Below the pieces are notes generated by a model. It made no database searches and had not been told where the DNA came from. It saw nothing but the letters and a program-made list of their open reading frames with translations. A stretch of DNA of 64,000 nt, taken from assembly GCA_002104905.1 (NCBI GenBank), contig MCFE01000046.1:124001-188000 (forward strand), read 5' to 3'. This document shows, piece by piece, positions 3,060-63,354 of the stretch. The DNA is from Basidiobolus meristosporus CBS 931.73 (lineage: Eukaryota; Fungi; Basidiobolomycota). Position numbers and translations under genes: made by a program. Within the stretch, counting starts at the first letter, position 1. Each line of letters begins with the position of its first letter.

Positions 3060-5490
3060 GAGATGGGACTTGTAAAGTCATTGGTTGAAAAACCTATAAA
3101 GATCATTACAGTGCCACACACACCCCAGTTATTCAAGCCTTACCCACTGCCCAAAGGACTCCATGCTGATGTGCATGATCTACTTAAGAAGAAGTTTGAT
3201 GCTGGTACCCTAGAGCCTTGGCATGGACCTTATGTTAACAGATGATATGTGACCAAAAAGAAGAATGGAAAGCTCTGATTCATTCAAGACATGCAACCTG
3301 CAAATGCTGTCACTATCAGAGATGCTGCAATACCTCCATCTGTTAATGACTTTGATGAGAGCTTTAGTGGCTACTCCATCTTCTCAATATAAAATCTCTA
3401 CTCAGGATATAACCAGATCCCCCTGGAAGAGATATTAGGAGATATGTTTACACTCAGATACCATTTGGACTATTAAGGATGACAAGACTCAGCCAAGGGG
3501 CTACAAACTCCATGGCTCAGCTCCAGATATGCATGGTGCATGTGCTGTACCAGTTTATACCTGGAAATATGCTGTCTTTGTAGATGACCTAGTCATCAAA
3601 GGACCAAGGTTCCAGGACACCACTGAAGCTATGCCTTGAGATGGAAAGTTTGTCTATGGGCACATCTTGGACAATGATGCTATATTAGGGGCCATTGAAG
3701 AAGCAGGACTCACCATCAGTGGTGAGAAGAGTAGCTTTGGTGTATCAGATATATCTATTGTTGGACAAAGATGCAACACTTATGGTTGCTCACCTATACA
3801 CTCTAAGACACAAAAGATATGAACTGGCCCACTCCCACAAACCTAACTCAAGCTTGTGGCTTTGTGACAGCTTGTGGGTTTGTTAGGATCTGAATACCAA
3901 GATTTTCTGAAATTGCAGAACCAAATTACCAACTACAAAGAAAGAATGCCCCATCTATATGGGGTGAAGGACAAGAAGAAGCAATGCAACTACTAAAGGA
4001 GGCCATAGTAACCCCACTGGTTCTAAGACCTCTTGACTTTCAGAATACCAATTGCCCACATTTATTGACATTTGATAGAAGCCCTTTAGAGAACATACAG
4101 ATGGCAACATGTAACTGTAGCAAAGTGGCAAGCTATAAACTGTTGGCCAGAATACAGAACTAATCTGAAACCAGAGATACTTAAGATAGAAGGTATTTGT
4201 AAGGGCAAAAGCTTTCCACTGAGAGCAATGCATTTGTTTTTCAAGAATATCCCTATACTGATGACCAACTTGTACATGGGGCATTTCAAGCTGAATCAGC
4301 TCTATGGGATAACAAGGAAGTTTTAAAGAATTGGCACAATATTGTAGAGTATCTGCTTCCCTAAGTATTTCCCATTGGCTCCAATCAACATTCATATGCA
4401 TATGCAACAATACAAGTGCAAGGACTGGATGAGCTGGATTTGTATTTATACAAATGGTCTTCTAAGCCATTTCTACCAGGAAGACATTGGAAGCATTGGG
4501 AGTCATATATTGACATTGTAGGAATATTTATCCAGTAACAGATCACCAATGCTAACTTGACAAATCAACAGCTATTGTGCAAACAGTTTGTGAAAGGATC
4601 TGAGTGGCTATACTGCAAATATAAAGCTAAACGCGTAGATCTCTGCTGCCACTGTATCCCTTTGTTACTCCATCTGGCTTGATGTGCTGGGAATATTGGC
4701 TTGGCTTCACCTTTTGGGAGTTTCTTATGGAGCAGATGTGTGGGGGTATTGGAAGACAAGTCAAGCCGCAGGTACTACCATATCTCAATCTCATCAAGAA
4801 TATTACCTTCAAGTCTGTCATGGATATGATGAGTTGGCACATGGACAATAGCAAGGAAGAGTTGAAAAACACTGAGAACCAATGTGCACATGGAGACACC
4901 TATTCCTATTGCATCAAGAAGCTAACCAGCCCCAATCAGTGGGTAATTGGTTAAGTAATGCAAAGTTGAGCTGGGTGCAACAAGCAACTAATTATTGTTA
5001 GGAAAACTCTACCAAGTTATGCAGAATTCCTCTTGGTCACAAGCCAACTTCTTCACCATTCAATATGGAATTCACACAACCAATAGCCAGAATGCACCTA
5101 TAAGGTTGACTAGTATCCAGCAGGGAGAAGGAATATATTGGCTAAATACCACAAAGCTCATTGTGGATATCCAGGAGGTAATCATGGCAGAAGTGGCAGC
5201 TACCAAGCACATGTTTGCAAGATTCTTATGTTACCATCAATACAAGGTATATGGCAACTTTGCAAGCATCCACTAAAAAGCCCTAAGGTTGAGGTGATAG
5301 AAGTATGTCAATTGCAGCAGGTGTGCATGTTTGTTGAGGTTAATAATCAGAAGGCCATTGGATTTTGGATTCAGACTATATGTGGATTACTCAAGGTGGT
5401 AGTGGGTAAGCAAATAAAGAGGGGTGATTCTACAGAGGGATATATGTATTGTGCCAGGGGAGGTAGAAAAAGGAAATACCATTTGGTATA
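3060..5490 (+). mobile_element. Degenerate Ty3/gypsy pol (RT, RNase H, integrase Zn-binding remnants)
   Basis: KPIKIITVPHTP..PYPLP, KKKNGKL.FIQDMQPANAVTIRDA..PP, YSGYNQIPL, FVDDLVIKG-like and H..GGNHG motifs spread over broken frames. Confidence 0.75.
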
Positions 5491-5499
5491 TTGATATGG

Positions 5500-6150
5500 T
5501 AGCATTATACAGAACTGGCTATAGGCCACCATACTGCAGTGATAATGCCATCAGAGGCTTGCAAAGTAGCCTTCAAAATACTGTCAAGCTTCTTGCCATA
5601 TAAGGCAATTGGATGTACAGGCCATTTAGATCCACTCAAATAGTTGTAAAATGCACCAAGACTGCTGTTGTTGTTATTACAGTAGTCTCCTGATGGGATC
5701 TTGGTGGCTGATCTGGATTGGATCCACCTGCAGGACCAAATTTTTTTTTGTAGGCAAAGATCTATGATTGTAAAGGTAATTGCCCAACCATTGGCTAGGG
5801 ACAAATTTGAATATCTTAGATCACAATTAAGATTAGCCAATATGGATATTTAGCTGAGTGGGAGTGTTGTAAATACTTTTAATTGCACCTAAATACCCGC
5901 CAAGTGTGTGAACTTAAACATTACCTACAAATCTTGGAGAATACTGACCAAGTCTTTTGTAAGGATTTATATAGATTATTTTCACCAAATACCTGGTACC
6001 CAGAACATGAAAATACTCAAAGTTGTCTAAACTGCCTCAAACTTTGCACACATGTTCTTGGGCCCTTCCTAAATCTTTTCTACATGTCTGCTATGCCAAG
6101 ATCATACAAGATATGAATACTACTCTTACACTCAACATATCATTAAGTCA
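5500..6150. mobile_element. Gypsy RNase H scrap (-) fused to a copia 3' end with PPT and LTR (+)
   Basis: HPIALYGKKL on - strand; PLARDKFEYLRSQL on + strand followed by GAGTGGGAG then TGTTGTAAA (LTR start near 5866). Confidence 0.65.
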
Positions 6151-43891: not shown

Positions 43892-44524
43892 ATGAAGGGA
43901 TTTCATTTTCACGGTCTTCTTGCCTACATCGTATATCTCACATCACTGAGATCCGCAGCGGGATCACCAATCTACGGTTACGATGGTGAATCCAAGTTAC
44001 CATCACAGCAATGCTTGGAGGTGTTCCAGCAAGTCCAGGCCCAGAATCAGGATAACGGCTGCGTGCCCATTGACAAGATTCTCCCCGTCGCCGCGCAAAT
44101 CAAACTCGATCCGGCCAACGCCGGCCCAAAAATGACCCAGATCGCCGACATCATCTGTCAGCAGTCACCCGCGTGCACACCGCAATTCCTAAACAATTTC
44201 AAGTCGAACATAACCGCCCGCTGTGTTGGAGATGATGCAACCAACCCCATGGTAACCGGTTCCGTCAGACTCATCGACAACTATACTCCGTCCCGAGAGA
44301 TGGGATGTCTGAAGGACCCAACCAACGGGGCGTACTGCGCAGTCGAAGCCGCCGAGTGGGTGATCAAGAACCATCCAGACCCAAACATGCAACCCACCAA
44401 AGAGATGTGCACGCCGTGCACAAAGGGCTGGATAGAGCAGTATGATAAATATTCTCCACAATATCCCGATTTGAAGGACGATCCTTACCTTCCTAAACTG
44501 AAGGCCGTCTGCCAATCACAGTAA
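43892..44524 (+). CDS. Secreted 10-Cys protein of unknown function (210 aa, intronless)
   Basis: Hydrophobic N-terminus, 10 Cys incl. GCLKDPTNGAYC and MCTPCTKGW; TATA upstream. Confidence 0.8.
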   Translation: MKGFHFHGLLAYIVYLTSLRSAAGSPIYGYDGESKLPSQQCLEVFQQVQAQNQDNGCVPIDKILPVAAQIKLDPANAGPKMTQIADIICQQSPACTPQFLNNFKSNITARCVGDDATNPMVTGSVRLIDNYTPSREMGCLKDPTNGAYCAVEAAEWVIKNHPDPNMQPTKEMCTPCTKGWIEQYDKYSPQYPDLKDDPYLPKLKAVCQSQ

Positions 44525-44590: not shown

Positions 44591-45637
44591 CTACTTAATG
44601 AGCGGGAGTAGCACCCCCAGCACTGCTAGCCAGCCAACCTGGCGAGCCGTGCCAGGAGACGGTACGCTCGGTGTCTCCAGGTGATTCTGGTAGATAGTTG
44701 AGTCATTCAAACACTGGCCTATGCTCATCATCGAGTAGCCTGCAGATTTCATGATCTCCATAGCCACCGGGAATTGCTGTACTCCCTCCATCCTTAGATC
44801 GTGCTCCAAAGAGATCACTCCATGTGCCAGAGTAGGGGCACGAGTGTTGATGAAATCGCGGAATGTCTGCTCCACGTTGGCAGGGTTGTACTTGCTGCTT
44901 GGGTCATTGAGCTTCCAGTCGGAAGTATCCATGTCCCACAACACCACCTTGTATCCCAGGTTGCGGACAATCGTGCGAACCCTGTCGTCGATGTCGCCGA
45001 AAGGAGGGCGCATGTATTTCGGAATAACGCCAATCGTATTAAAGATGGCCTTCTCCGTCCACTTCATCTCGGCAACGATCTGCTCGTTTGTCTGGGTAGT
45101 GAGCCCTCGATGGCTCCAGGTATGCGAGCAGATCTCGTGTCCTAAGCGAAGCAGGTTAATACCGGTGCAGATCCCCCTCGAATTTCCATTCTAACCTTCA
45201 GCATAGGCCCTCTTCAGGATTTCCGGGCGTTCAACAACCCGACTACCGATAACACAGAACATCGCCTTCAGATTCTGCTGTTTCAAGTAATCTAGCAGGA
45301 AAGTAGTGTTTGTCGATGGGCCATCATCGAAAGTGAGGCCCCACACCTTTGGTTGCGGACAGGCGACGATGTCATCTGGTCGAACACAATTACCACATGT
45401 CCACCAGCAACCGCAATCAGGTCCGCAGGGATTCTGGGTGCATGTTGGGGGCGAGCCAGCCATTGCGTGCGGTCTGATCGGGACAGTAGGGATGGTCATG
45501 TTGGAGGTCAGCGTGGCGAACTCGGGGTTTATTGGCGGTGGTTGATCCCACTGCGGCCAGCCTGGAGTCTGGGCTTGCACCAGGGCATTTGACACTACGA
45601 GCGATAATAAAACAGCGAAATCTTTCCGGGTGGCCAT
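44591..45637 (-). CDS. Chitin deacetylase (CE4), secreted, probable GPI signal (2 exons)
   Basis: Signal peptide; CWWTCGNC; TFDDGP, HTWSH, RPPFG, LEHD; hydrophobic C-terminus; TATAAA on - strand at 45690-45695. Confidence 0.93.
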
Positions 45638-45910: not shown

Positions 45911-47325
45911 ATGCAGACTCCTATATTGGATTCATACTTGGCCCAGCATTTCCTACAGTTATGTTCAGACGAAGCAAAAATCCGACGTTTGATCTCTAGT
46001 AGACAATTCAAGCCTGGTGACATCGTGGTAGCTTCTCCTCCCTTGGCTAGTTTCCCTTTGCCGGAGTACCGAAGTGAGATTTGCGATTTCTGCATGAAAG
46101 AATCGAAAGATCTATTGAGATGCTTCCGGCTGCCTGGAGGCTCATTACTGCTCCACCACGTGTCAGACAAAAGCATGGAAAAAATACCACAAATGGTCGT
46201 GTAAACTATGGCACGATCAGAAAGATAGTGATTCCATTATGCTCAGACGTGTGGTGTTTGGGATGCACAGGAAGCCAAATGTAGTCAAGTATCAGCTCGA
46301 CAGAGAGTACCTATTCGATGAACGGATCAACCAGGAGGCGTTTGAGACCTTGACGCATCATTCCGCTAGTTGGGATGAGCAGACCAAGCGCCAGTTTATA
46401 GTCACAAGTTCACAAGTTCTTAAGGCGCTCCTGAGTACGGCCTTTCCGATCCCACCGAATATAACGGTGTCTAAACTCGCGGAATATCTTGGCCGCTTCC
46501 AGTGCAACAATTTCACCATCCACGATCGCGAGCTCTTTCCAGTCGGAGAGGGCACGTACCCTATCGGGTCGTTGTTCAATCACTCTTGCCACCCGAATTG
46601 TATTGTTATGTACGAGAAAGATGTCCAAATCATTCGTAGTATTCGCCCTATAGAAGCCGGTGAGGAGCTGTGTATCGCTTATGTTGACAGCTTCGTACCA
46701 AGAATACAGAGAAGAGCTCAGCTGCAGGCGAAGTATTATTTCCAATGTGATTGCATGCTCTGCTCAGATCCGGTCCTAGGTAGACTGGACGCGGAGGATG
46801 TCAATGATAGCACTGTTCTAGCCCAGTTGAAGCCAGGGTCGGAAATCTCTCACAGGAGTAGGTTTATCGTATCGACCTTTTGCACGCAGAACAAGAAGGA
46901 GCATGAGAAGCTTCAACGGAGCCTCGTCTCATCTCTAGACGACTCATTTTTCACGTTGACCATGCTTCAAGCATGTAACTCCAGTCCATAGAGAAGCCTT
47001 GAAATCGGCCAACTGGGAGATCGCAGCAGAGACCGGATGGTATATGCTCTCCATGTACTTGCTGCGCTACCCTTGCAATCATCCATTGACGGGTCTGCAT
47101 GCATTCACACTAGCCAAATGTGTGTGGAATTGTCGGAGTGAAAGCATCGGAGATTGCGAACGTCTGCTAACGCTTGCTAAGTCCATCTTGGCAGTCACTC
47201 ATGGGCACAATGAGGAAGTCGTCAAGGAGATCTCAATCATGTCAGATATGGTGCAGGATATGGTGCAGGATATGGTGCAGGATATGGTGCAGAGTGAACA
47301 ACAGCCATTATCGGAAATTAGCTGA
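45911..47325 (+). CDS. SMYD-type SET/MYND lysine methyltransferase with two apparent +1 frameshifts (about 46124 and 46983)
   Basis: Split SET (FKPGDIV; RFQCNNF; SLFNHSCHPN; GEELCIAY; YYFQCDC.LC); MYND CDFC...CSGC..AHYCS.TCQ..AW..YHK.SC restored by removing one base; C-terminal YPCNHPLTGL..F.LAK. Confidence 0.85.
47245..47292 (+). repeat. Perfect 12-bp x4 coding repeat (DMVQ)4
   Basis: GATATGGTGCAG four times. Confidence 0.95.
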
Positions 47326-47407: not shown

Positions 47408-48434
47408 ATGATTCCAAGTGTTGCCTTCGTTAGCTTTGCCTTAATAAATATGGTTCCAGCGTATGCGCGCGTAAACGTAGACGTATCATTGGCTACCCGC
47501 CATAAGGGATATATCCCGTATTTCGCAAAGCAGCGTGATCCGATACTTGGATCAAAAATGCGGAGCGGAGTACGGATCTTGCGGCGAGGGGTTGTGCTGT
47601 AGCGAGTACGGCTACTGCGGGTACACTTCGGATCATTGCGAAGCCGGCTGCCAGTCCCAGTACGGATCCTGCGACGATGGAACTATGGCCAAATTAATGA
47701 CTGGCTGCACTGAGCCAGGGACCTTTGCCGTCACCTTTGACGATGGCCCAAGCGTGCTTACCTCCAGGTTGCTCGATTATCTGGATTTCCAGGGCGTTAA
47801 AGCAACCTTTTTCATGAACGGACTAAATTGGAAAAACGCTGACACCAAAAATCCTATCCTCAGCATCTATCAGTTTGCAGATGTGGTCCGGCGCATTTAC
47901 GCCTCTGGCCACCAAATCTGCTCTCACACCTGGGGTCATGTTGATCTTATTACCGTCAACGAGTATAACGTGACTTACGAGCTGACCCGGCTGAACAGTG
48001 CCTTCGCCAACATCCTGGACAGGGTGCCTACCTGCGTGCGGCCACCATATGGCGATGCCGACACGACTGCCCTGAAGATTCTGAAGCGTATGGGTTACAC
48101 GGTTGTTAACTGGAACGTGGATCCAGTGGACTGGAACCCGGCGAATACCATCGACCAAATGTTTGCCGAATATGTTGCGCAGACAGGAAGGACGGACCCA
48201 AAGGAGGGCAAATTCATCGCTCTTAACCATGACGTTTGGAACACCACGGCTGACTTCAGGCCAACAAATTACCCAAAAACCATTCCTTTGGCGCAACGAG
48301 CTATCGAGTATCTGAAAGGCCGTGGATGGCGTCTTGTCAACCTTGCTGAATGTCTAGGAAGTGCGCCATTCTATCGCAGCCCAACACCATCGGATGAGAG
48401 CTGTGGTCCGACTGGATGCCCTTCAAATGACTAG
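47408..48434 (+). CDS. Chitin deacetylase (CE4) with N-terminal CBM18/hevein module; apparent +1 frameshift after the signal peptide
   Basis: CGAEYGSCGEGLCCSEYGYCG....HC.AGCQ..YGSC; TFDDGP, HTWGH, RPPYG, LNHD; signal MIPSVAFVSFALINMVPAYA lies in the neighbouring frame. Confidence 0.9.
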
Positions 48435-50738: not shown

Positions 50739-50948
50739 TGGGCTGATATCTAATATTAATGCCCGCAGTTCTGATAATGATACAGGGGTGTGCAAGTAAA
50801 AAGGCTGGAGATACAGTTAAAGATAATCACAAGTAACAACAAAGATAAGTATGTCATTTGAATTTTATTGATTGAGGATTTCCAGTAATAATGTGGTGAT
50901 GACCACCTACATTTTCAGCTCATTGAGTTAGGCGCAATTGCCACCACA

Positions 50949-51223
50949 CTAATTGTATTGAACGTTTTGCTCTGTCTCTGCCACAAGGGTTGTGTATTGT
51001 ACATCTTGGGTGGGATGCATCAGAACGTATGGATATGAAGCGCTATCGTCTGAGTGTTCCGCTCCCTTTTGCTTTGCATATTCTAATGCGTTGGCCCCAC
51101 CCTCCAGTTCGAGACCGGGCCCTGTTTGATACTTGACATTGAAGCCTTTATTTAGGTTGGGGCAGCAACGGCAACTTGATTCGCGGCAAGGCCTAGAATC
51201 ACTGCTATGGTAGTAGAGCGCAT
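50949..51223 (-). CDS. Small secreted protein (about 91 aa) with an apparent -1 frameshift in a C run (about 51160)
   Basis: MRSTTIAVILGLAANQVAVAAP joins NLNKGFNVKYQ...QYN* if one base is added; TATA-like TATTATATAG upstream. Confidence 0.55.
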
Positions 51224-51600
51224 GCTGAAGAATAGCTGAGCAATAAGTTAGTTGCATAGGCCGCTATATAATAAGGTTTGACCGAGGGCATAAAGTATGG
51301 CTGAACATTGGAAATATCGAACCCTTGCAACCCAGAGAACCCTGGCTGCTCACCCGAAGTCTCGCTTGTCTGCATTGGCTCACTCATCTCCGAATCATCC
51401 CCTTCCTCAATTGATGGCTGGTATTCTTGACTAGGGACCGAAGTGTCCTGATAACAGGCATCCAGTTGTTCGACACATGGCTCATTGGTGTAGGCTACCT
51501 GGGAGTCGCCGAGTGGGGTAGCGGAGATTGCTTGCAATGAAGCGATGACAGAAACTAGCAAGAGGAAAGAAAGCTGCATGACTGGCTGGTGGAGTCTCAT
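51205..51600 (-). CDS. Small secreted acidic protein (start at 51600 or 51579)
   Basis: MQLSFLLLVSVIASLQAISATP signal; Glu/Asp/Ser-rich body with C..(6)..C. Confidence 0.6.
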   Translation of the reverse strand: MRLHQPVMQLSFLLLVSVIASLQAISATPLGDSQVAYTNEPCVEQLDACYQDTSVPSQEYQPSIEEGDDSEMSEPMQTSETSGEQPGFSGLQGFDISNVQPYFMPSVKPYYIAAYATNLLLSYSSACALLP

Positions 51601-52150
51601 GCAAATTATCCCGATTTATATCACCTTCTCGTACCCACTCAATTAGGCTTTGCGCTCATAGCACTAGCTTTAAGCGAGCTAGATTGATGGAGAACAGCGT
51701 CGTGTTAAGAGCTCAACCACCACAGTAACCTGTTGTTACAAGAAACTAGGGTTGTTGCTGATTACCTACGACTGTCATGGTGTGTACAGCACAGTACAGG
51801 CGAGAATAAATTGATTAGTTGTTTGCCAAGAGTTGGGGATATTGAGTGTATAGTGCTTGGGATAGTTGATGCTATCTTAGAGTTTCTTATTGCAGTACGC
51901 GCGTTTTCAATCAGTTATTTGTCAAGAAACAAGCCAAATGTGATCTTTATTTGTGTTACGCTTTAGCTATGCTACTTCGATCGATAGCTTGGATGGCGTA
52001 GTGACAAGTTACTACAAATATTTACAGATATATCAGACTCCGAGATTCCCACGGTTGATTTCGACAGAGTGTGTTTTTCCTTTTTTTAGCAGTGTAGCTT
52101 GCCTGAATAAAGGTTTGACCAAAGGAACTGCCATCTCCGGTAAGCTTGAT

Positions 52151-52278
52151 ATGCGAGCCTTTTGGTACCTATGCTCCATCGCTATGCTGAGTGTCTCTTG
52201 CGGTAGTCAAATCATTGCCTAGCAGATGATGTACGCCATTGTCAGCCAGCATGTTGTAAAACTTGTTTCCTCAGGTAA
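52151..52278 (+). CDS. Possible 42-aa secreted Cys-rich peptide (requires one extra A at about 52210)
   Basis: MRAFWYLCSIAMLSVSCGSQ plus NHCLADDVRHCQPACCKTCFLR* in the -1 frame. Confidence 0.3.
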
Positions 52279-52511
52279 TGTTGCAGATTTGGCCTCATTT
52301 GTAGCCATTCATGATCTCTCGATCATTTCTCCAAGCTTGGCCTAAGACTCAGCACTTTAGGTGGGAAGCCACTATACTTAGTAGAAAAGGGCACATGAAG
52401 CAGCCGTTAGCATAATGACCCAACACTAAGCCACCACCTGAACAAGGTGATATAAAGCAGCTGGTGTGGGCTTGTCAGTCTTAAGACTTATTGCACTGCA
52501 CTTCCTCTGCC

Positions 52512-52730
52512 ATGGTGTTCGATCAAGAAGCCCGTTTGTATTCTGCCGATGTCAGAGAAGAGATTGCCAGAGCCAAGAGAGTTAACAATGGAAACTACAT
52601 CTCATTCACAGTCAGAGGGATTCGCTGGAATTGGAGAGGACCTGGAACTGGCGAGCTGTCCTTCAAGCAGATCCTCGAAGGCAGAAAGGGAACCGCCTAC
52701 GTGGATAGCCAGACATGGGTAATCTCGTAG
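52512..52730 (+). CDS. Small orphan protein (72 aa)
   Basis: TATAAA at 52451; ATG in GCCATGG context; CpG retained; no family recognised. Confidence 0.45.
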   Translation: MVFDQEARLYSADVREEIARAKRVNNGNYISFTVRGIRWNWRGPGTGELSFKQILEGRKGTAYVDSQTWVIS

Positions 52731-55700
52731 GGTTTGGTTGGTGCTTGCGTAGCCGGTGGACTCTTGGAGATGTTGCTGTTAAGGATATCTAGCTGAAGCA
52801 TTGCGAAATAAATGAGTCCAAATCTTGCATTCCTTTGACCCAGCTATATTATGCTCGTTGCACTGTGAGAATTTAACTCTCCTAGAAGAGCAAAACACTT
52901 TATTAAATATTTGTAGATTACTACTTTGAATGTCCAAGTGTAGCGTGAGAGCAGAGTTTTACATGCTTTTGATCAGATATACGTGTACAACTGCGATGTA
53001 CAGGCAGTTCTTGGTGTCGGCATCCGTTCCAGTAATCAGTATCGTGTACACACGCTCCATACTTCTGAAGACAATCATTTCTGTTACGGTCAATATGATA
53101 TGGCACTCCTGAGGACTTTTTAACATATATCCTAAATAACCTTGAGACGCATTAGCATCTATCAGCAGAACACCACTTTGAGTCTGTAAAGGCTATTATC
53201 GCTGATCTATGCAAGAGCTAAAGAAATCAACGTGTTTCCACTGGTCTCAAGAGGAAAATACAGTATCTTTAATAAATCCTAACCCTAAGCCTTGAAAACC
53301 ACTTTTTTGGTGCTTCCTCAAGATATCCTTATGGTTAGTTTCAAAGAGAGTTTTTGCCAGAGTATATAAGCTTTGCTTCAGCCCTACCTACTACTACTGC
53401 AATGTCAGTTAGTACTATATATTTCTTTTGGTTTGGCAACACTTACGGCTTTCAGTATCTCAGGTCCTATCATTTTACAGACAAGGATGAATATTTTCTA
53501 GGGAGTGAATAGGTCAAATAACCTATGCACAAGATTTAGCAATACACTACTCACAACTTCTATGATTATTTATAGCTAAACCTAACCTTGGAGAAAGCAT
53601 CAATATTTGAATCAGTCTAATGACTATTTCAAGCATTTGTATAATGCCTAGCATACTTTGTGTGGTAAGTCATAGTGTTTGTTAGGTGGCTTGCTTACTC
53701 CTCTTTGATGCAAGCAGTTGTGACATTTAAACTTACCAGGTGTGGGACAAGGATTACTGTTGGAAGCACTAACCTAAGGTTTACAATTCTGTACAGAATA
53801 GAAAATTTCAATGGTGCCTCAGTTATACCTTTTCTGGATAACTGTCACACAGACCTCAACTTCATCTAAGGTGGTGGGATAGGGCATAACACTCTTGCAT
53901 TCTCCACTCTCTGCCTGCATTTACATCTATAGCTTTTGGTGCCAAGTGCATATTGACAATGTGAAAGGGTTTACTATATATTATAGGGGATACATAAGCT
54001 CTCATCAAGTCAAATTCTGCTTTTACTTCCAAATTGAATGATGGCTCATGTGCATATAGCAACCATCTGCCACATGGATCTGCATTAATAAACATCCTGA
54101 GAATTCTGATTTTAAGTGATTTATTTGCATAAGGGACTAGTTTAAGAATACTTAGATCCAGTTCTATCCACACATTCTTGGCTGAACAGAGAAGTCATCT
54201 GCAGAGCTGTTGTGGTGCTGTGATCCAGGATTATAGGCTGCAAAACTCCACAAAAATGCTCATTGTCACTTTTACAGCATTACCAAGGTTTTACCACTAA
54301 GGGAACTTTGCAAAAAGATGCAGCTTATCCAAATGACTCCCAAAATCATCAACAGTCACCTCTTATGCTGATAGCCATTGATAAGCTGCCTCAAACATCT
54401 TGCTATATTAGATCTTAACTTGGGCAATTCTTATATACAGAGTTTGGGGGAAGTAATGGGTTCCATATCTACTGAAGAACTCATCCAACTTTTAAGTACA
54501 ACTCAAATGGCCTTGACAGGTCTTTGTATGGTTGCATATAAGAGCATATAGATTTCTAGGGGAAGTGAAAGTCCTCACAGGGGTGAAATCTTTATTATTG
54601 CACAGTAGGGGGTGACAAGGGTTAAGGTATAGTGCTTATAGCAGAAGTTAGAACTGCAAGAGCCCTCAGAGATGTGGTAACCCAGAGAATAACAGAGGCA
54701 GGGGTATGGGGATGCAATCATTTAATATACTTCCTTCAATATCAATACTATCATATACCTTATCTATTAAAATCTTGGATATGTTACACATCTATTTAAT
54801 TGGTTTTTCCAATTTTTCTGACATTAATCACTGCTAGATGAGAGTATTTTAGTAATAGTTAGAGTAGCAACTGATGTGAGAGATGTAGTCCTCTAGTGAA
54901 TAACACAATTAGGGTGTATCAGGGGGGCAATCCCTCATGTACTTTCTAATCATTGCTATAATTTCAAAATCTCTCATATGACAGCTATAAGATTCTAATA
55001 GCTTAGTTACACACCACTCTGCTATAATGCTTGAGGAATTATGTGAATACAGGAGTTGTGGTAAAGGTTGAATAGGGTAAGAAGACAAGAGGTCTGGAGC
55101 ATGCAGTCTCCCAGACAAAAAACAATGTGGATGTCTTATGGATGCAATCCCTCAACATATTTCTTTCAAATCAACTTTGTCTTTGCTTTTGATTATATAT
55201 CCAGTTAGCAAAACCAGATTTAATGATACCAATTTTTCTAACCCTAAGCATTATTTGGTTTGATACAATTATCAATATAATATATCTATGGCTATATATA
55301 TTATATATAGATCATGGTCTTTACCATTTTGGTGTAATTTTTAGATATAATGGAGTCATTTCCCTGTAATCAATAAGAACTAAAATAAAAAATGCTATAT
55401 AACATTTCAAAGTATACTGAAATAATATGGCTTAGTTGAATAGTATAGATCTTCAATCAATATTGCAATAAAATTCAAGATTGACAATTTTAGCACTATT
55501 TTCAGAGGTCTCCTCAGATAATCGATCTACATTTATTTGGTTTGAAATATTACGATCAAGAGAAACATTACAAACATAGTTTCTAATAACATCCTACGGA
55601 TGACATAATTTATTCGAGGGCGATCAAGAGAAACCTCAGGGAAGAAGATTTACTCGCGCATATTACCGCACCACACCACAATCTAGCATAGAGAGCCAAT

Positions 55701-56108
55701 GCATCCGCTGCTTTTACAATAGGAGTGAATACTCTCATGTGTGTACTAGGAACCAGAGAGGATACATAATCTATTGTGGAGTGGCCTAGACAGCAGCTAT
55801 CTCGACCTCGTCATATCCTCACCTGTGTATCGGAGAAGATAACCCTCATGCATAGTATACGCAATATTGTACTCGTGTATGCACCTGGTTGGTTGTCTCT
55901 TACATCATGGGCGAGGGGTGAGTGAGGGGTGAGCTATACACCGGGATTGTCAAACAGCCAACTCATTATTCTCCTGTTGACAATAAAGATAACGGGACAA
56001 TTTCAAAAGTGTGGGTGATATCAACGCTGAATTGCTGCGTATCATATCGCTCAAGAGATCACACGTAGGCGGTGGCCAAAGCGACGCTCCAGATGCTACT
56101 CATTTAGC

Positions 56109-56116
56109 TATATATA
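56109..56116 (+). promoter_or_regulatory. TATA-like box upstream of the LuxI-like gene
   Basis: TATATATA about 100 bp before the ATG at 56213. Confidence 0.45.
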
Positions 56117-56212
56117 GCACTCCGCAACCTGGCTTTTCTGACGCAAATCCCTCTCTTTTTGATACGGAATTGATCACAGCGTCCACACAGACTGATCGAC
56201 AACCACTCAGCA

Positions 56213-56811
56213 ATGGTATATCAAATCAGAATCGTCCAAGATGAAGAAGGAATTAACCAAATCCAAAGACTTCTTTACACGGTCTACATCGAGGAGGGCA
56301 AGTGGAAGTTCAACCCTGCCAATCCAGCTGGGATAAGGATTGTGGACGATAGGCTAATTGACAACCGGGATGATATCGCGACATACTTTGGTGCATTCAG
56401 CAACAAGAAACTAATAGGCTGTTGCCGAATCTGTCCAAGACATGAAGGTTTATTTGAGATCCAGAGTTACACCAGCAAACCTTTGAGCCTACTGAATACA
56501 AAGAACTTGGTGGAGGGTTCAAGGAGTGCAGTACTGCCTGAGTATAGAGAGCACGGAGTATTCCGTATTATGTTTCGTGAAGTTCTCCAATACTGTTATC
56601 AACGAGATCTTTTGCTATTTACTTGTACTAGTTCAAAGGAACTTCGACGTGTTTTTCAAATTATTGACTTCCAATGGTTGAGAATTTCTCATTCAAATAT
56701 GAATCCCACGACCCAGAAGAGTGCCAACTGTTTATGGTCAAGTCCCGACGAGACTTACTCAATAGTATTTCAAAACTTTGCCCAACAGTTCCATTACATA
56801 GCCATCTCTAA
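56213..56811 (+). CDS. Intronless LuxI/FeeM-like (GNAT-fold) N-acyltransferase; apparent -1 frameshift at about 56671 (uncorrected ORF ends at 56824)
   Basis: RLLYTVYIEEGKW, IDNRD, LIGCCRI, VEGSRSAVLPEYREHG, FTCT; corrected tail PMVENFSFKYESHDPEEC...SHL* gives 199 aa. Confidence 0.75.
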
Positions 56812-57537
56812 GCTTGATAAATAAATCCAACTGATATTTTACCCTATTTTATAATATCCTAATTTTGATCAAAGCCTGAATACATTCTATTTTGCATTAT
56901 CCTAATTGCTGAATAATGCATAGTTACACCGTTTTCTATCTTTTCCTAGCTTTCAATTAATGTATATGCTCAATATATTTCTAATATTACTCTTCAACTA
57001 TTCAGCATTCTTATGTATGGTTTTTTATTAATCAAATTATTATAAAGTATATCAGCCATCATTCAAATGGCTATCTATCTTAAAGCCATCCTAAAGGCTT
57101 ATATACAATAATTAAATCTCAAATACATTAGACTTGTTCTGTTTTGTTGTACCAGGTAACTCCACTTCATTCTTTTACTTACCATGTGCTGATATTTATT
57201 ATGATATTTGTTCAAACTATGGTATGATGCCTTTTATTCATTTTCAATTCTCCCTCATATGCTGCTAAATACAACTCCCTGAACAGATATATGTGAATAT
57301 AAATATACTGTATATCTACTAATATCAGAGCTTTTTCTTCAACTAGCAATTTTTCCATATTTGATGAGAAAACTTAGAGATTAGTGTAACCTAGATAACA
57401 GATATGACAAATATATCCACATGAAAATACTACACTAGTTCCATTATTCCCAACTGATCTAGTGCTATAGTAAGTCATTTATGCCATAAATAATGTAGCA
57501 ATCTAATGGACCACAAAGACCAGATACCAAGTGTTAT

Positions 57538-59180
57538 GTGTGGTAAAAACTTGTAATTCCACCTAAATATTCACTTGACTTAGTCACTTAGACAATCACC
57601 TACAAATCTTTGAGAATACTGACTAAATTCCATGTTGGAATATACTCAGAGTATTTTCACTAAAATATCATGTACCCAGAACATGGAAATTATTAAAGTT
57701 GTCCAAACAGCCCCACACTTTGTGCACATGTTCATGGGACCTTCCTAAGTCTATTCTATGTGCTTTTCATGCTGGGATCATGTAAAAGTATAAATATTAC
57801 TTTACACTCAATAAATTATTAAGTGAGGACCACACAATCTACTTGTTCTCCCAATCACTTCCAATATCTCCAAGACACTTACAGCAGGCTATATTCCCCA
57901 AGCTGTCACTCTCTGCAAAGTCTACCACTACTATTAATGGAATTTCTGTCCCTGCTGAAAAGTTGGATGGATCTGACCACCATGTGTGGTAGATAACAAT
58001 GAAAATCCTGTTACTAGAAAGTGGCCTTTGAGACATTGTCATGGGAGAGGAGATCCCTGCTAATGACATGGGAGAGGATTTATTCAAGTACCAGAAGAAA
58101 GTACAACATGCCCTCCACTGCATTTGACTTAATATCAAGGACAAATTGATAATTCAATGCACAAGTGCAAAAACAGCAAAGACTGCCTGAAAAGCACTAG
58201 AAGACACTAGCCAGTCATGTTCAGCTGCTAGGAAAATGTTTCCTAAGAGAAAACTCCTTACTACAAACATGCTCCCAGGAGATAAAATAAAAAATCTAAT
58301 TAACAAAATTACCCTACTGGTGGATGTGATGGAATCTGTGGGCATACCAACAACTGATGAGGATATGATAGTTATCATGTTGAATAGCCTGACAGACAAG
58401 TCTCAGGGCTTTGTATCAGCCCTAGAGCTTGTAACTGAAGATTTGACCTTGAATTACATATGTGGAAGGCTCCTGGATGAAGAATTAAGAAAATCAAGTG
58501 CCAATAAGCTAGTAGAAGAAAATGCTTTAATAAGCAATGATAACCAACAAAGGAGGTACTCAAGACCCTTTAAAGACAACAGCAACCTGTTTTGCAACTA
58601 CTGTAAAGGGAAAGAACACACATTAGATGGGTGCTTCAAAAACAGAGACAATCAGCAAACAGAAGCCTCTACATGGAAATACCGTAACAACAGAAGATAA
58701 GCTATTTGCATCTACACTACATGTGACTACACACAAAGATTCTCAGATGTGGTACATTGACTTTGGAGCCTCTCAACACTTGAAACACCAAAAAAAAACA
58801 TTTACCCAATATCAGGATACTCTAATCAAGAAGGTGTTCATGAGTGACAAAAGAACACTTGATGCAGCAGGAGAAGGGACTTTCCAAGCAAACTTAGAAG
58901 CAGTGAAGGAAGCCATACACTAAGTGACCTTTAAAAAAGTACAATATGTACCAGAAATAGCCAAGAAACTACTATCTGTAAACAAGGCCACAGCAGAAGG
59001 ATTTAGTTTCAGCTTTTGCAACTCTGGATGCAGGATCACTGATCCAAAGGTACCTATATCACTTCAGGTATCAGAGAACACAATCTCTACAAGTTGACTT
59101 ATATTCCTATCATATCTGGATGTCAATTGAAGTAACTTAGATGAAGAAATACCAATGCTTTGGTACAGGAGGTTAGGGGG
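57538..59180 (+). mobile_element. 5'-half decayed copia (LTR 57538-57886, degenerate PBS, gag, protease, pre-integrase)
   Basis: Family LTR; AEKLDGS, LTLNYICGRLLDEEL, CNYCKGKEH, WYIDFGASQH, YVPEIAKKLLSV, LWYRRLG. Confidence 0.9.
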
Positions 59181-59699
59181 GAGACAGTCACCAACTGGCA
59201 AAATCATTATTTCAGCTGAAACAGAGAAGCCAGCGCTACTGTTGTAGCTTTGATACAGAGTGTGTACTACTACTGTTGTAGCCTTGATACTGTTGTGAGT
59301 AGACACAAGGCAGGAGAGTAGAGCTAGGCAAGGCAGGGCCAGGAAAGGACTTAGGTGTGGATCAACAAGGAAAGGCTGGATTATTCAAGCAAGCTGTTTA
59401 TTCAAGCTGAGTTATCAGACTGAGGAATACATAAGGGGGGATAGGACAATATATACTTTTTGGCAATATAGATGCCAAGAGATATTGGCTAATACTGATG
59501 GCATTCTGGGGTGAGGCACAGTAGGTGTTCCAAGATAGAAATATACTTAAGAGCAGACTAGAATAACACATGGGGATATGTCAGGGGTCAGCTGACCATG
59601 TGACCTGGTCATGTGACATGCAAATACCATGTATGGTATTCAGCTACATATATTCCAAAGGGGAGCTTCCATAAAATGTTGCATTGAATGACATTGACT

Positions 59700-62900: not shown

Positions 62901-63354
62901 TAGGATAAGGGGGGAGAGAGTCACCAACAGGTGAAATCATTATTTCAGTTGATACAAAGAAGCCAGCACTACTGTTGTAGCATTGATACAAGAGTGTGTA
63001 GCTGAGGGGAACTTGTAGGTAAGTTTACAAGAAGTGATGTGTTGTGTTGTATTATGATTAGTTTGGGGCTTGTTCTACAATGTAGAGGCTAATCAACAAT
63101 ATACAACAACTTCCAGTATGCTAATACTGCAATAGGTTATTGGGAGTTTGATATACCAATAGAAGATATAACTTTCACTAATTTCCTCAATCTTAGGCTC
63201 AAAATATACTGTAGGCAGTGTTTATCACTTCTACAGCAGTGTTCTGACCTTGTCTTGACTAATGGGCTTATTTACTTTTATAGTAACTTTTCTTTATTTG
63301 GAAGTCACTTTCCTTTCTGAGAAAATATTTCCTAATATGGAAATTCTGAACTCC

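What the first reader, a model, noticed from the sequence alone, without database searches (positions are those of the whole stretch)
56213..56811. LuxI (AHL synthase)/FeeM-like N-acyltransferase in a fungal genome
Seen: an intronless ORF of about 199 aa (after adding one C at about 56671) with L21-x3-Y25-x5-W31, D50-x2-D53, GCCR72, E101-G-S103-R104, VLPEYREHG and FTCT. Known: LuxI synthases share R/F/W/D/D/R/E/R (LasI R23, F27, W33, D44, D47, R70, E101, R104, numbering from memory) with the same spacings. Six of the eight are identical here, F becomes Y, and the first Arg is Leu. The YRxxG loop is GNAT motif A, also seen in FeeM/OlsB-type N-acyl amino acid synthases. Inference: a horizontally acquired bacterial-type acyltransferase that might make AHL-like or N-acyl amide signals, i.e. 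fungal quorum-sensing mimicry or interference. No LuxR partner is in the window. Loss of the first Arg may mean a different amine substrate than SAM.
Basis: partly seen in the sequence, partly recalled or inferred. Interest (0 to 1): 0.82.

Follow-up and report, generated by a model that had tools for sequence, protein, structure and literature searches.

The report
Bacterial-type LuxI/FeeM-like acyltransferase in Basidiobolus
A gut-dwelling fungus (Basidiobolus) carries, as the last ordinary gene before a chromosome end, an intronless gene for a small enzyme whose closest relatives are bacterial and which has the fold and key residues of the enzymes that make bacterial N-acyl signal molecules; what it makes is untested.

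Summary

With one more base the gene encodes 199 aa ending at 56811. This matches Basidiobolus meristosporus K493DRAFT_302639. All public-run contigs across the site carry that extra base, so the shift is probably an assembly error or specific to this copy.

The protein passes Pfam FeeM (N-acyl amino acid synthase) but not Pfam Autoind_synth. A profile of its family nevertheless finds LasI, TofI and BjaI as its best solved relatives. The predicted structure (pLDDT 95) matches BjaI, RpaI, LasI and FeeM best. Seven of the eight LuxI signature positions are kept.

The family is small (260 representatives) and mostly bacterial. Myxobacteria are nearest at 40% identity. At least one other fungal lineage (Mariannaea) has it.

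The gene lies in fungal DNA, has fungal GC, is syntenic with B. meristosporus and is under purifying selection. It appears multi-copy. Two unchecked first-reader notes of this scan report intact subtelomeric copies elsewhere in this genome.

Bacterial relatives are fused or adjacent to PAS_4 sensor kinases or LuxR-type regulators, which hints at signalling. Product, expression and any quorum-sensing role remain untested.

The parts
56213..56671 (+). Codons 1-153 of the acyltransferase gene. They cover the N-terminal LuxI-like block (L21, Y25, W31, N37, D50, D53, R72), the family-conserved E82 and Y86, the catalytic strand E101-G-S103-R104 and the motif-A-like loop YREHG.
   Evidence: ORF list and sequence. 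tblastn to P0002 gives 87.6% identity over aa 1-153. Pfam FeeM, Acetyltransf_5 and Acetyltransf_1 match. Family conservation is. dN/dS is 0.25 against B. meristosporus.
56669..56672 (+). Site of the one-base deficit: ttcc here, against ttccc or tttcc in every other copy seen. Downstream of it the homologous reading frame is +1.
   Evidence: Frame jump in tblastn. Direct comparison with B. meristosporus DNA. Logan contigs of runs X1 and X2 all carry one extra base here. One 225-nt contig is otherwise identical to the window, has C inserted behind 56670, and has single-copy depth (82.7 against 79.1 in the unique flank).
56671..56811 (+). Codons 154-199 plus the stop in the +1 frame (PMVENFSFKYESHDPEECQLF...HSHL*). 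This is the conserved C-terminal part of the GNAT fold and holds the family's F-K-Y-E motif (F161, Y163).
   Evidence: 78.7% identity to P0002 aa 153-199. F161 and Y163 are at least 90% conserved in the family. dN/dS is 0.29 in this frame.
56213..56824 (+). The ORF as the window stands (203 aa). Its last 50 residues (WLRISHSN...SKLDK) have no homologue and are out of frame relative to the family.
   Evidence: P0001 aligns to P0002 only over residues 1-155.
56109..56116 (+). TATATATA, about 100 nt upstream of the ATG. It is a possible eukaryotic TATA element. The ATG has A at -3 and G at +4.
   Evidence: Read directly from the sequence. Function not tested.
56820..56825 (+). AATAAA just after the stop of the 199-aa frame. 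It is a possible polyadenylation signal.
   Evidence: Read directly from the sequence. Function not tested.
50927..57155 (.). Block colinear with B. meristosporus scaffold MCFE01000234.1 (L001 5101-10897) at 75-91% nucleotide identity, non-coding DNA included. The acyltransferase is the last host gene before retroelement fragments (from about 58.2 kb) and repeats shared with the B. meristosporus scaffold end (59171-59266, 62908-63039).
   Evidence: blastn of L001 against the window. Pfam of neighbouring ORFs finds chitin deacetylases and a SET-domain gene upstream and copia gag/pol fragments downstream.

Best explanation
This is a nuclear, intronless Basidiobolus gene for a protein of about 199 aa. 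The protein is an N-acyltransferase of the GNAT subgroup that contains the LuxI acyl-homoserine-lactone synthases and the FeeM-type N-acyl amino acid synthases.

Shown here:
- The family assignment, the fold and the conserved residues.
- The mainly bacterial range of the family, with myxobacterial proteins nearest.
- The fungal chromosomal setting at a subtelomere, synteny with B. meristosporus, and purifying selection.
- Evidence for several copies.

Inferred:
- The enzyme takes an acyl group from an acyl thioester and puts it on the amino group of an amino-acid-like acceptor, with E101 on strand beta-4 as the base. The donor is probably acyl-CoA in a fungus. The product would be an N-acyl amide, either an N-acyl amino acid or possibly an AHL-like compound.
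- The gene line came from bacteria by horizontal transfer and has since taken on fungal base composition.
- The one-base deficit in this window is more likely an assembly error, or a lesion of this one copy, than a property of the gene family.
For: Family:
- Pfam FeeM scores 41.9 bits (P0002) and 32.5 bits (window ORF) against a cut-off of 27. Acetyltransf_5 is also above its cut-off.
- 52 of 66 relatives match FeeM and 53 of 66 match Acetyltransf_5.
- The family profile against PDB sequences has as its best hits LasI 1ro5 (E 3.5e-5), TofI 3p2f (2.4e-4) and BjaI (7.9e-4). These align D50/D53, R72 and E101-x-S-R104 to LasI D44/D47, R70 and E101-x-S103-R104.

Fold:
- The AF2 model has pLDDT 94.9.
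- Foldseek's top hits are BjaI, FeeM, LasI, TofI and RpaI.
- VIA-align gives Z 18.2 for BjaI (179 aa, 2.5 A), 18.1 for RpaI, 17.2 for LasI and 17.1 for FeeM. Ordinary GNATs align over only about 140 aa.

Conservation: D50, Y86 and E101 are invariant. W31, N37, R72, E82, R104, F161 and Y163 are at least 90% conserved.

Range and origin:
- The whole-library search gave 260 relatives among 1.84 billion representatives. The best is 40% identical, from Pyxidicoccus. Corallococcus loci also carry it.
- Other named relatives are from Burkholderiales and Gammaproteobacteria MAGs.
- Neighbouring Atlas clusters are 80-100% bacterial.

Fungal setting:
- ORF GC is 41% against 40% in the flank. The myxobacterial genes are 56-61%.
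- The locus is syntenic with B. meristosporus, with fungal neighbours.
- dN/dS is 0.25 and 0.29 for the two parts of the gene.

Copies and frameshift: all contigs in runs X1 and X2 carry the extra base. Depth over the gene is about 450 against 60-80 in the flanks.
Against: - No substrate, product or transcript was observed.
- Pfam Autoind_synth gives no hit, so SAM use is unsupported. FeeM's own sequence (2g0b) is not reached by the family profile, so 'N-acyl amino acid synthase' also rests on a broad Pfam model and on fold.
- Fungi lack free cytosolic acyl-ACP, and the donor is a guess.
- Other fungal members exist (Mariannaea P0058 and the HET-flanked contig L009). In the careful tree the five fungal rows lie on one side of a branch (86/64). 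Transfer may therefore be old, single, or between fungi, and the direction is argued only from distribution.
- The runs that show the extra base are Logan contigs of uncertain strain identity (share of words 0.56), so a true frameshift in this copy is not excluded.
Confidence: 0.7

Rival explanations
1. It is a true AHL synthase. It would bind SAM in the N-terminal pocket, acylate its amine from acyl-CoA and lactonise, releasing an acyl-homoserine lactone and MTA. The fungus could then talk to, or jam, LuxR-type receptors of gut bacteria.
For: Seven of the eight LuxI signature positions are kept with LuxI spacing: Y25 for F27, then W31, D50, D53, R72, E101 and R104, plus S103. The best solved relatives by sequence profile are LasI, TofI and BjaI. 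The best structural matches are the CoA-dependent AHL synthases BjaI and RpaI, at Z about 18 over about 180 aa.
Against: There is no Pfam Autoind_synth hit for the protein at E<=10, and only 5 of 66 relatives hit it weakly, best 0.0025. The first signature Arg is Leu across the whole clade. The family-specific invariant positions N37, E82 and Y86 are not LuxI features. The bacterial relatives pair with PAS_4 sensors, not with Autoind_bind LuxR receptors.
Confidence: 0.12
2. The copy in this window is a real pseudogene. A one-base deletion replaces the last 46 residues, including the conserved F-K-Y-E strand, while intact sister copies at other chromosome ends carry the function.
For: The window as given lacks the base. 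The family is multi-copy in the public runs. Two first-reader notes report intact 600-nt copies elsewhere in the same genome (unchecked). Subtelomeric families commonly hold dead copies (general knowledge).
Against: No contig in X1 or X2 lacks the base. The one contig otherwise identical to the window over 225 nt has the extra C at single-copy depth. dN/dS of the shifted part is 0.29, so any lesion would be very recent.
Confidence: 0.25
3. It is an ordinary, vertically inherited fungal GNAT acetyltransferase with no link to acyl-amide signals.
For: Pfam Acetyltransf_1 also matches (27-28 bits). Many plain GNATs reach Z 14-17. A few other fungi have relatives.
Against: Only two fungal lineages were seen among the 30 hits whose origin was looked up. 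The Mariannaea protein has a single close relative in the word search of 5.8 billion sequences. The best bacterial hit scores 147 bits against 71 bits for the best other-fungal hit. The N-terminal block of about 50 residues and the full-length alignment are specific to LuxI and FeeM enzymes.
Confidence: 0.05
4. It is bacterial contamination of the assembly.
For: The gene is intronless and its closest relatives are bacterial.
Against: The gene lies on a long contig between intron-bearing chitin deacetylase genes and copia/LINE elements. It has the GC of its surroundings. It is syntenic, non-coding DNA included, with an independent B. meristosporus assembly.
Confidence: 0.01

Closest known systems
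LuxI-family AHL synthases (LasI 1RO5, TofI 3P2F, and the CoA-dependent BjaI 5W8A-G and RpaI 6WN0)
   Same: Same fold over about 175-183 residues (Z 16.4-18.2). Same size of about 200 aa. Equivalent W31, D50, D53, R72 and E101-x-S103-R104 with the same spacing. These are the best solved relatives of the family profile by sequence.
   Different: No Pfam PF00765 match. The first signature Arg is Leu and the Phe is Tyr. The clade has extra invariant positions (N37 in an N-P-S/A-G loop, E82, Y86). It has a GNAT motif-A-like Y-R-x-x-G. It is not paired with an Autoind_bind LuxR receptor. It is found in a eukaryote.
FeeM and other N-acyl amino acid synthases (Pfam PF21926; structure 2G0B)
   Same: Pfam FeeM is above the gathering score (41.9 and 32.5 against 27). 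The fold match is Z 17.1 over 170 aa. It has Tyr before the conserved Trp, as FeeM does (FeeM Tyr27 and Trp32, listed in PMC9654057). A Glu on strand beta-4 is conserved.
   Different: The sequence of FeeM itself is not reached by the family profile at E<=10. Here the catalytic strand reads E-x-S-R as in LuxI, whereas PMC9654057 Table 1 lists Glu94-Val95-Val96-Gln97 for FeeM. There is no fee-type gene cluster or ACP gene nearby.
OlsB ornithine-lipid N-acyltransferases (Acetyltransf_5; NCBIfam NF052555 and NF052554)
   Same: Weak homology over the N-terminal 140 residues and the same GNAT subgroup.
   Different: Scores are 26 and 20 bits against cut-offs of 320 and 350. The protein is shorter than OlsB, and there is no OlsA partner.
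PAS4-LuxR 'solo' receptors of Photorhabdus (PluR, PauR), for the bacterial relatives only
   Same: Bacterial members of this GNAT clade are fused to, or sit beside, PAS_4 + GerE proteins of the same domain make-up.
   Different: To my knowledge, the known PAS4-LuxR signals (photopyrones, dialkylresorcinols) are made by ketosynthase-type enzymes, not GNATs. No such partner is present in the fungal window.

Membership tests
LuxI / Autoind_synth (PF00765) | Match to the Pfam family model above its gathering score | tested here: not met
   No PF00765 hit for the window ORF or P0002, even at E<=10. Only 5 of 66 relatives hit it, best E 0.0025.
LuxI / Autoind_synth (PF00765) | Eight signature residues (LasI R23, F27, W33, D44, D47, R70, E101, R104) | tested here: inconclusive
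   W31, D50, D53, R72, E101 and R104 are identical and aligned by HMMER to LasI and TofI. F is replaced by Y25. R is replaced by L21, and this is so throughout the clade. The residue numbers of LasI are from memory, checked only against the alignment.
LuxI / Autoind_synth (PF00765) | LuxI-type GNAT fold with the N-terminal substrate-pocket helices | tested here: met
   Model pLDDT 94.9. BjaI Z 18.2 (179 aa, 2.5 A), RpaI 18.1, LasI 17.2, TofI 16.4.
LuxI / Autoind_synth (PF00765) | Uses SAM as acyl acceptor and releases AHL plus MTA | not testable with these tools
   Needs enzyme assays or LC-MS.
LuxI / Autoind_synth (PF00765) | Genetic pairing with a LuxR-type (Autoind_bind + GerE) receptor | tested here: not met
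   tblastn with PAS_4-HK and PAS_4-GerE partners of bacterial relatives found nothing in the window at E<=1. An Autoind_bind domain was not itself searched for in the window. In bacteria the partners carry PAS_4, not Autoind_bind.
FeeM-type N-acyl amino acid synthase (PF21926) | Match to the Pfam family model above its gathering score | tested here: met
   32.5 bits (window ORF as it stands) and 41.9 bits (P0002) against a cut-off of 27. 52 of 66 relatives match at E<=1.
FeeM-type N-acyl amino acid synthase (PF21926) | Fold like FeeM (2G0B) | tested here: met
   Foldseek E 1.1e-7. VIA-align Z 17.1, 170 aa, 2.8 A.
FeeM-type N-acyl amino acid synthase (PF21926) | Makes an N-acyl amino acid from an acyl thioester and a free amino acid | not testable with these tools
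   Needs expression and LC-MS.
OlsB ornithine N-acyltransferase (NCBIfam equivalogs) | Score above the equivalog cut-off | tested here: not met
   26.3 bits against 320, and 20.4 bits against 350.
GNAT superfamily | GNAT core fold and a motif-A-like pyrophosphate loop | tested here: met
   Acetyltransf_1 is above its cut-off (27.3 against 20.7). 933 of 999 aligned chains, overwhelmingly GNAT acetyltransferases in the rows shown, score Z>=8. The loop Y111-R-E-H-G115 is read from the sequence.

The most novel reading that the evidence does not exclude
Basidiobolus, which lives among gut bacteria, makes a bacterial-type N-acyl signal with this enzyme. The signal would belong to an undescribed bacterial signalling system in which LuxI/FeeM-like synthases of this clade are fused or adjacent to PAS_4 sensor kinases and PAS_4-LuxR-type regulators. 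The fungus would thereby address or jam bacterial receptors, and the gene's spread over several chromosome ends would reflect selection for dosage or variety.
Probability: 0.12. Interest if true: 0.85.

Novelty: new member of a known kind. Interest (0 to 1): 0.55.

Why it matters
Enzymes of the LuxI/FeeM kind make the N-acyl signals and lipids of bacteria. I found no paper that describes one in a fungus. Automatic annotation calls the B. meristosporus protein a FeeM-domain protein, and Tabima et al. 2020 (PMC7466969) count 28 N-acetyltransferase gene models among Basidiobolus candidates for horizontal transfer, without describing them individually.

Here the gene is conserved, under purifying selection, apparently multi-copy and subtelomeric in a fungus that lives in animal guts. 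That makes cross-kingdom signalling or interference a concrete question that can be tested at the bench: express one small intronless gene and look for acyl amides.

The bacterial side may matter more. The consistent link of this GNAT clade to PAS_4 sensors suggests an undescribed synthase-receptor pairing.

Tried and rejected
- Single-sequence phmmer of P0002 against PDB sequences found nothing meaningful. Only the family profile reached LuxI enzymes.
- The word-index protein search found only the B. meristosporus protein. With the family alignment it added few proteins, almost all unnamed. The whole-library search was therefore needed.
With the myxobacterial protein it returned only three myxobacterial loci.
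- P0003 itself is not on record for contig look-up, so its context was read from L002.
- No supplementary tables of Tabima et al. are held, so I could not check whether protein 302639 is on their list of transfer candidates.
- No listed run that holds the stretch is on record as RNA, so expression is untested.
- Two of the three cluster look-ups returned mostly unnamed metagenome proteins, so the taxonomic range of the family is only sketched.
- An intron that would rescue the frame was considered and rejected. The only GT..AG pair near the shift would be about 34 nt long and would remove the conserved 'VFQIIDF' segment (read).
- Contamination and a vertically inherited ordinary GNAT were rejected, as set out under the rival explanations.

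Full report
**The observation**

The window has an ATG at 56213 that opens an ORF of 203 aa running to 56824 without any edit.
- L21-x3-Y25-x5-W31
- D50-x2-D53
- G-C-C-R72
- E101-G-S103-R104
- VLPEYREHG
- FTCT

The only close relative in the word-index search is a 199-aa protein of Basidiobolus meristosporus CBS 931.73, K493DRAFT_302639 (P0002). It is 88% identical, but only over the first three quarters of the ORF. tblastn shows why. P0002 residues 1-153 match 56213-56671 in one frame, and residues 153-199 match 56668-56808 in the next frame. The window reads gacTTCCAatg where B. meristosporus reads gacTTTCCAatg.

**Is the frameshift real?**

Two public runs of one sample (X1, X2; Logan contigs) hold the locus. 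Every contig that crosses 56668-56672 has one base more than the window.
- Diverged copies have T inserted behind 56668. This is the B. meristosporus spelling.
- One 225-nt contig is otherwise identical to the window and has C inserted behind 56670. Its depth is 82.7, like the unique upstream flank at 79.1.

No contig supports the window's spelling. The strain identity of these runs is not certain: the share of words is 0.56, and the contigs collapse repeats. I therefore put about 3:1 on an assembly error over a lesion specific to this copy.

Against B. meristosporus, dN/dS is 0.25 for codons 1-153 and 0.29 for codons 154-199 read in the shifted frame. The 199-aa frame is thus the one that selection has kept.

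**What the protein is**

By Pfam:
- FeeM (N-acyl amino acid synthase, PF21926) scores 32.5 bits for the window ORF and 41.9 bits for P0002, against a cut-off of 27. Acetyltransf_5 and Acetyltransf_1 are also above their cut-offs.
- Autoind_synth (LuxI) does not appear even at E<=10.
- NCBIfam gives only far-sub-threshold OlsB matches.

The whole-library search with P0002 gave 260 relatives at E<=1e-3 among 1.84 billion representatives, and only four at E<=1e-30. In an alignment of 66 single-domain members, D50, Y86 and E101 are invariant. W31, N37, R72, E82, R104, F161 and Y163 are at least 90% conserved.

A profile of that alignment, searched against all PDB sequences, has as its best hits LasI (E 3.5e-5), TofI (2.4e-4) and BjaI (7.9e-4). 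These align D50/D53 to LasI D44/D47, R72 to R70, and E101-x-S-R104 to E101-x-S103-R104. FeeM's own sequence is not reached. Across the 66 members, 52 match Pfam FeeM, 53 match Acetyltransf_5 and 5 match Autoind_synth weakly.

The AlphaFold model is confident (pLDDT 94.9). Foldseek puts BjaI, FeeM, LasI, TofI and RpaI on top. VIA-align gives:
- BjaI Z 18.2 (179 aa, 2.5 A)
- RpaI 18.1
- LasI 17.2
- FeeM 17.1
- MesI 16.9
- TofI 16.4

Plain GNATs score 14-17 but align over only about 140 residues.

The protein therefore belongs to the LuxI/FeeM subgroup of GNATs. It passes the FeeM family test, fails the LuxI family test, and yet keeps seven of the eight LuxI signature positions. The first Arg is Leu in the whole clade.

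A review (PMC9654057) notes that the first 100 residues of AHL synthases serve SAM binding and catalysis, and that FeeM resembles them in structure but not in sequence. Its Table 1 lists Tyr27, 'Try32' and Glu94-Gln97 for FeeM, against Phe27, Trp33 and Glu101-Arg104 for LasI. The Basidiobolus protein has FeeM's Tyr together with LuxI's E-x-S-R.

**Is it fungal DNA?**

Yes.
- Upstream lie chitin-binding and polysaccharide-deacetylase genes split by introns, and a SET-domain gene. Downstream from about 58.2 kb lie copia gag/pol fragments.
- ORF GC is 41% against 40% in the 5 kb upstream.
- A block at 50927-57155 is colinear with B. meristosporus scaffold MCFE01000234.1 at 75-91% nucleotide identity, non-coding DNA included. 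It is followed by shared repeats.
- In B. meristosporus the gene also lies about 8 kb from the scaffold end.
- An earlier follow-up of this scan identified the end of this window as a Basidiobolus chromosome end.

The gene is thus the last ordinary gene before the subtelomeric repeat zone. A TATATATA lies about 100 nt upstream and an AATAAA lies just past the stop. Both were read from the sequence and not tested.

**Copy number**

- The window has one copy.
- In runs X1 and X2, depth over the gene is about 450 against 60-80 in the flanks, with contigs at 83-99% identity.
- Two first-reader notes of this scan report intact 600-nt copies at other subtelomeres of the same genome. I did not check those notes.

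**Origin**

- The nearest relatives are myxobacterial. Pyxidicoccus caerfyrddinensis WP_163993469 is 40% identical, and two Corallococcus species also carry it.
- Other named hits are Burkholderiales and Gammaproteobacteria MAGs.
- The contexts I read are bacterial operon-like stretches.
- Neighbouring ESM Atlas clusters are 80-100% bacterial, and one is mostly Nucleocytoviricota.

The family is not exclusive to Basidiobolus among fungi.
- P0058 is from the ascomycete Mariannaea sp. PMI_226, on a 1.14-Mb contig, and is intronless.
- P0119 lies between two HET-domain genes.
- P0122 is 50% identical to P0058.
- P0058 has no other close relative, so the ascomycete occurrence is also patchy.

In a careful tree of 52 rows the five fungal rows lie on one side of a branch. 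Support is 86/64, and 91% of bootstrap trees agree. The myxobacterial clade is next to them. An AU test does not reject Basidiobolus plus myxobacteria as a clade (delta lnL 0.49, p 0.34).

By score, Basidiobolus is much closer to the myxobacterial protein (147 bits) than to the Mariannaea one (71 bits). The myxobacterial genes are 56-61% GC in 69% GC surroundings, so they may themselves be imports.

My conclusion is that a bacterial origin for the fungal genes is the economical reading of the distribution. Whether there was one transfer or several, and from which donor, is open.

**Function**

In bacteria the clade is tied to PAS_4 sensors.
- All 18 long relatives I scanned are GNAT-PAS_4-histidine kinase (some with a receiver domain), GNAT-PAS_4-GerE, or GNAT-PAS_4 with no further domain recognised.
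- The fused proteins form one clade (96/88).
- Five of nine unfused bacterial members whose neighbours I read have a PAS_4 kinase, a PAS_4-GerE or a GerE gene next door.

This is the pattern expected of a signal synthase and its receptor, but it is inference. I found no paper on it.

The fungal window has no such partner. Fungi offer acyl-CoA more readily than free acyl-ACP, and the best structural matches are the CoA-dependent AHL synthases. I therefore favour an acyl-CoA-dependent N-acylation of an amino-acid-like acceptor. Conditional on the enzyme being active as inferred, I put a plain N-acyl amino acid or other amide at about 55%, an AHL at about 12%, and something else for the rest.

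**Verdict**

- It is too strong on 'LuxI', and untested on signalling.
- HGT into Basidiobolus is already a published theme (PMC7466969), which tempers the surprise.
- The specific gene, its LuxI-like residues, its subtelomeric multi-copy state and the PAS_4 link of its bacterial kin make it a worthwhile and cheaply testable lead.

Noticed in passing
Proteins P0006, P0008, P0013, P0014, P0018, P0022, P0024, P0027, P0029, P0031, P0032, P0042, P0064, P0074, P0087, P0095, P0099; loci L006, L007, L010, L013: Bacterial relatives of this GNAT are fused to PAS_4 + histidine kinase (some with a receiver domain) or PAS_4 + GerE (LuxR-type HTH), or sit next to such genes. The fused ones form one clade. 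This looks like an undescribed signal synthase-receptor module, and I found no paper on it.
   Followed up: partly
L008 10001-10666 (Mariannaea sp. PMI_226, KAI5457081.1); L009 8001-8765 (metagenome contig with HET-domain genes on both sides): Ascomycete members of the same clade. They are intronless, 23-26% identical to the Basidiobolus protein, and have almost no close kin. This is a second patchy fungal occurrence.
   Followed up: partly
L002-L004, gene at 5001-5660: The myxobacterial homologues (Pyxidicoccus, Corallococcus) have 56-61% GC in 69% GC surroundings, so they may be imports there too. In Pyxidicoccus the upstream neighbour is a 1160-aa TPR-CHAT protein.
   Followed up: partly
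window 59171-59266 and 62908-63039; L001 11318-11453, 11708-11840, 13732-13868: Short repeats downstream of the gene are shared, at 88-93% identity, with the end of the B. meristosporus scaffold. The subtelomeric layout 'acyltransferase, then repeats' is thus conserved between the two assemblies.
   Followed up: no
window 44591-45637 (-) and 47535-48434 (+): Two polysaccharide (chitin) deacetylase genes flank a SET-domain gene (46239-46991). One deacetylase is split by an intron and the other has an N-terminal chitin-binding domain. A DUF7729 protein is at 43892-44524.
   Followed up: no
window 22001-50000 against the rest: A compositional domain. GC is 46-58% between about 22 and 50 kb, peaking at 58% at 22-24 kb, against 36-43% on both sides, including the acyltransferase region.
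   Followed up: no
ESM Atlas neighbours of P0002: One neighbouring cluster of FeeM-domain proteins (110 members, about 250 aa) is mostly from Nucleocytoviricota. Giant viruses may therefore also carry this kind of acyltransferase.
   Followed up: no
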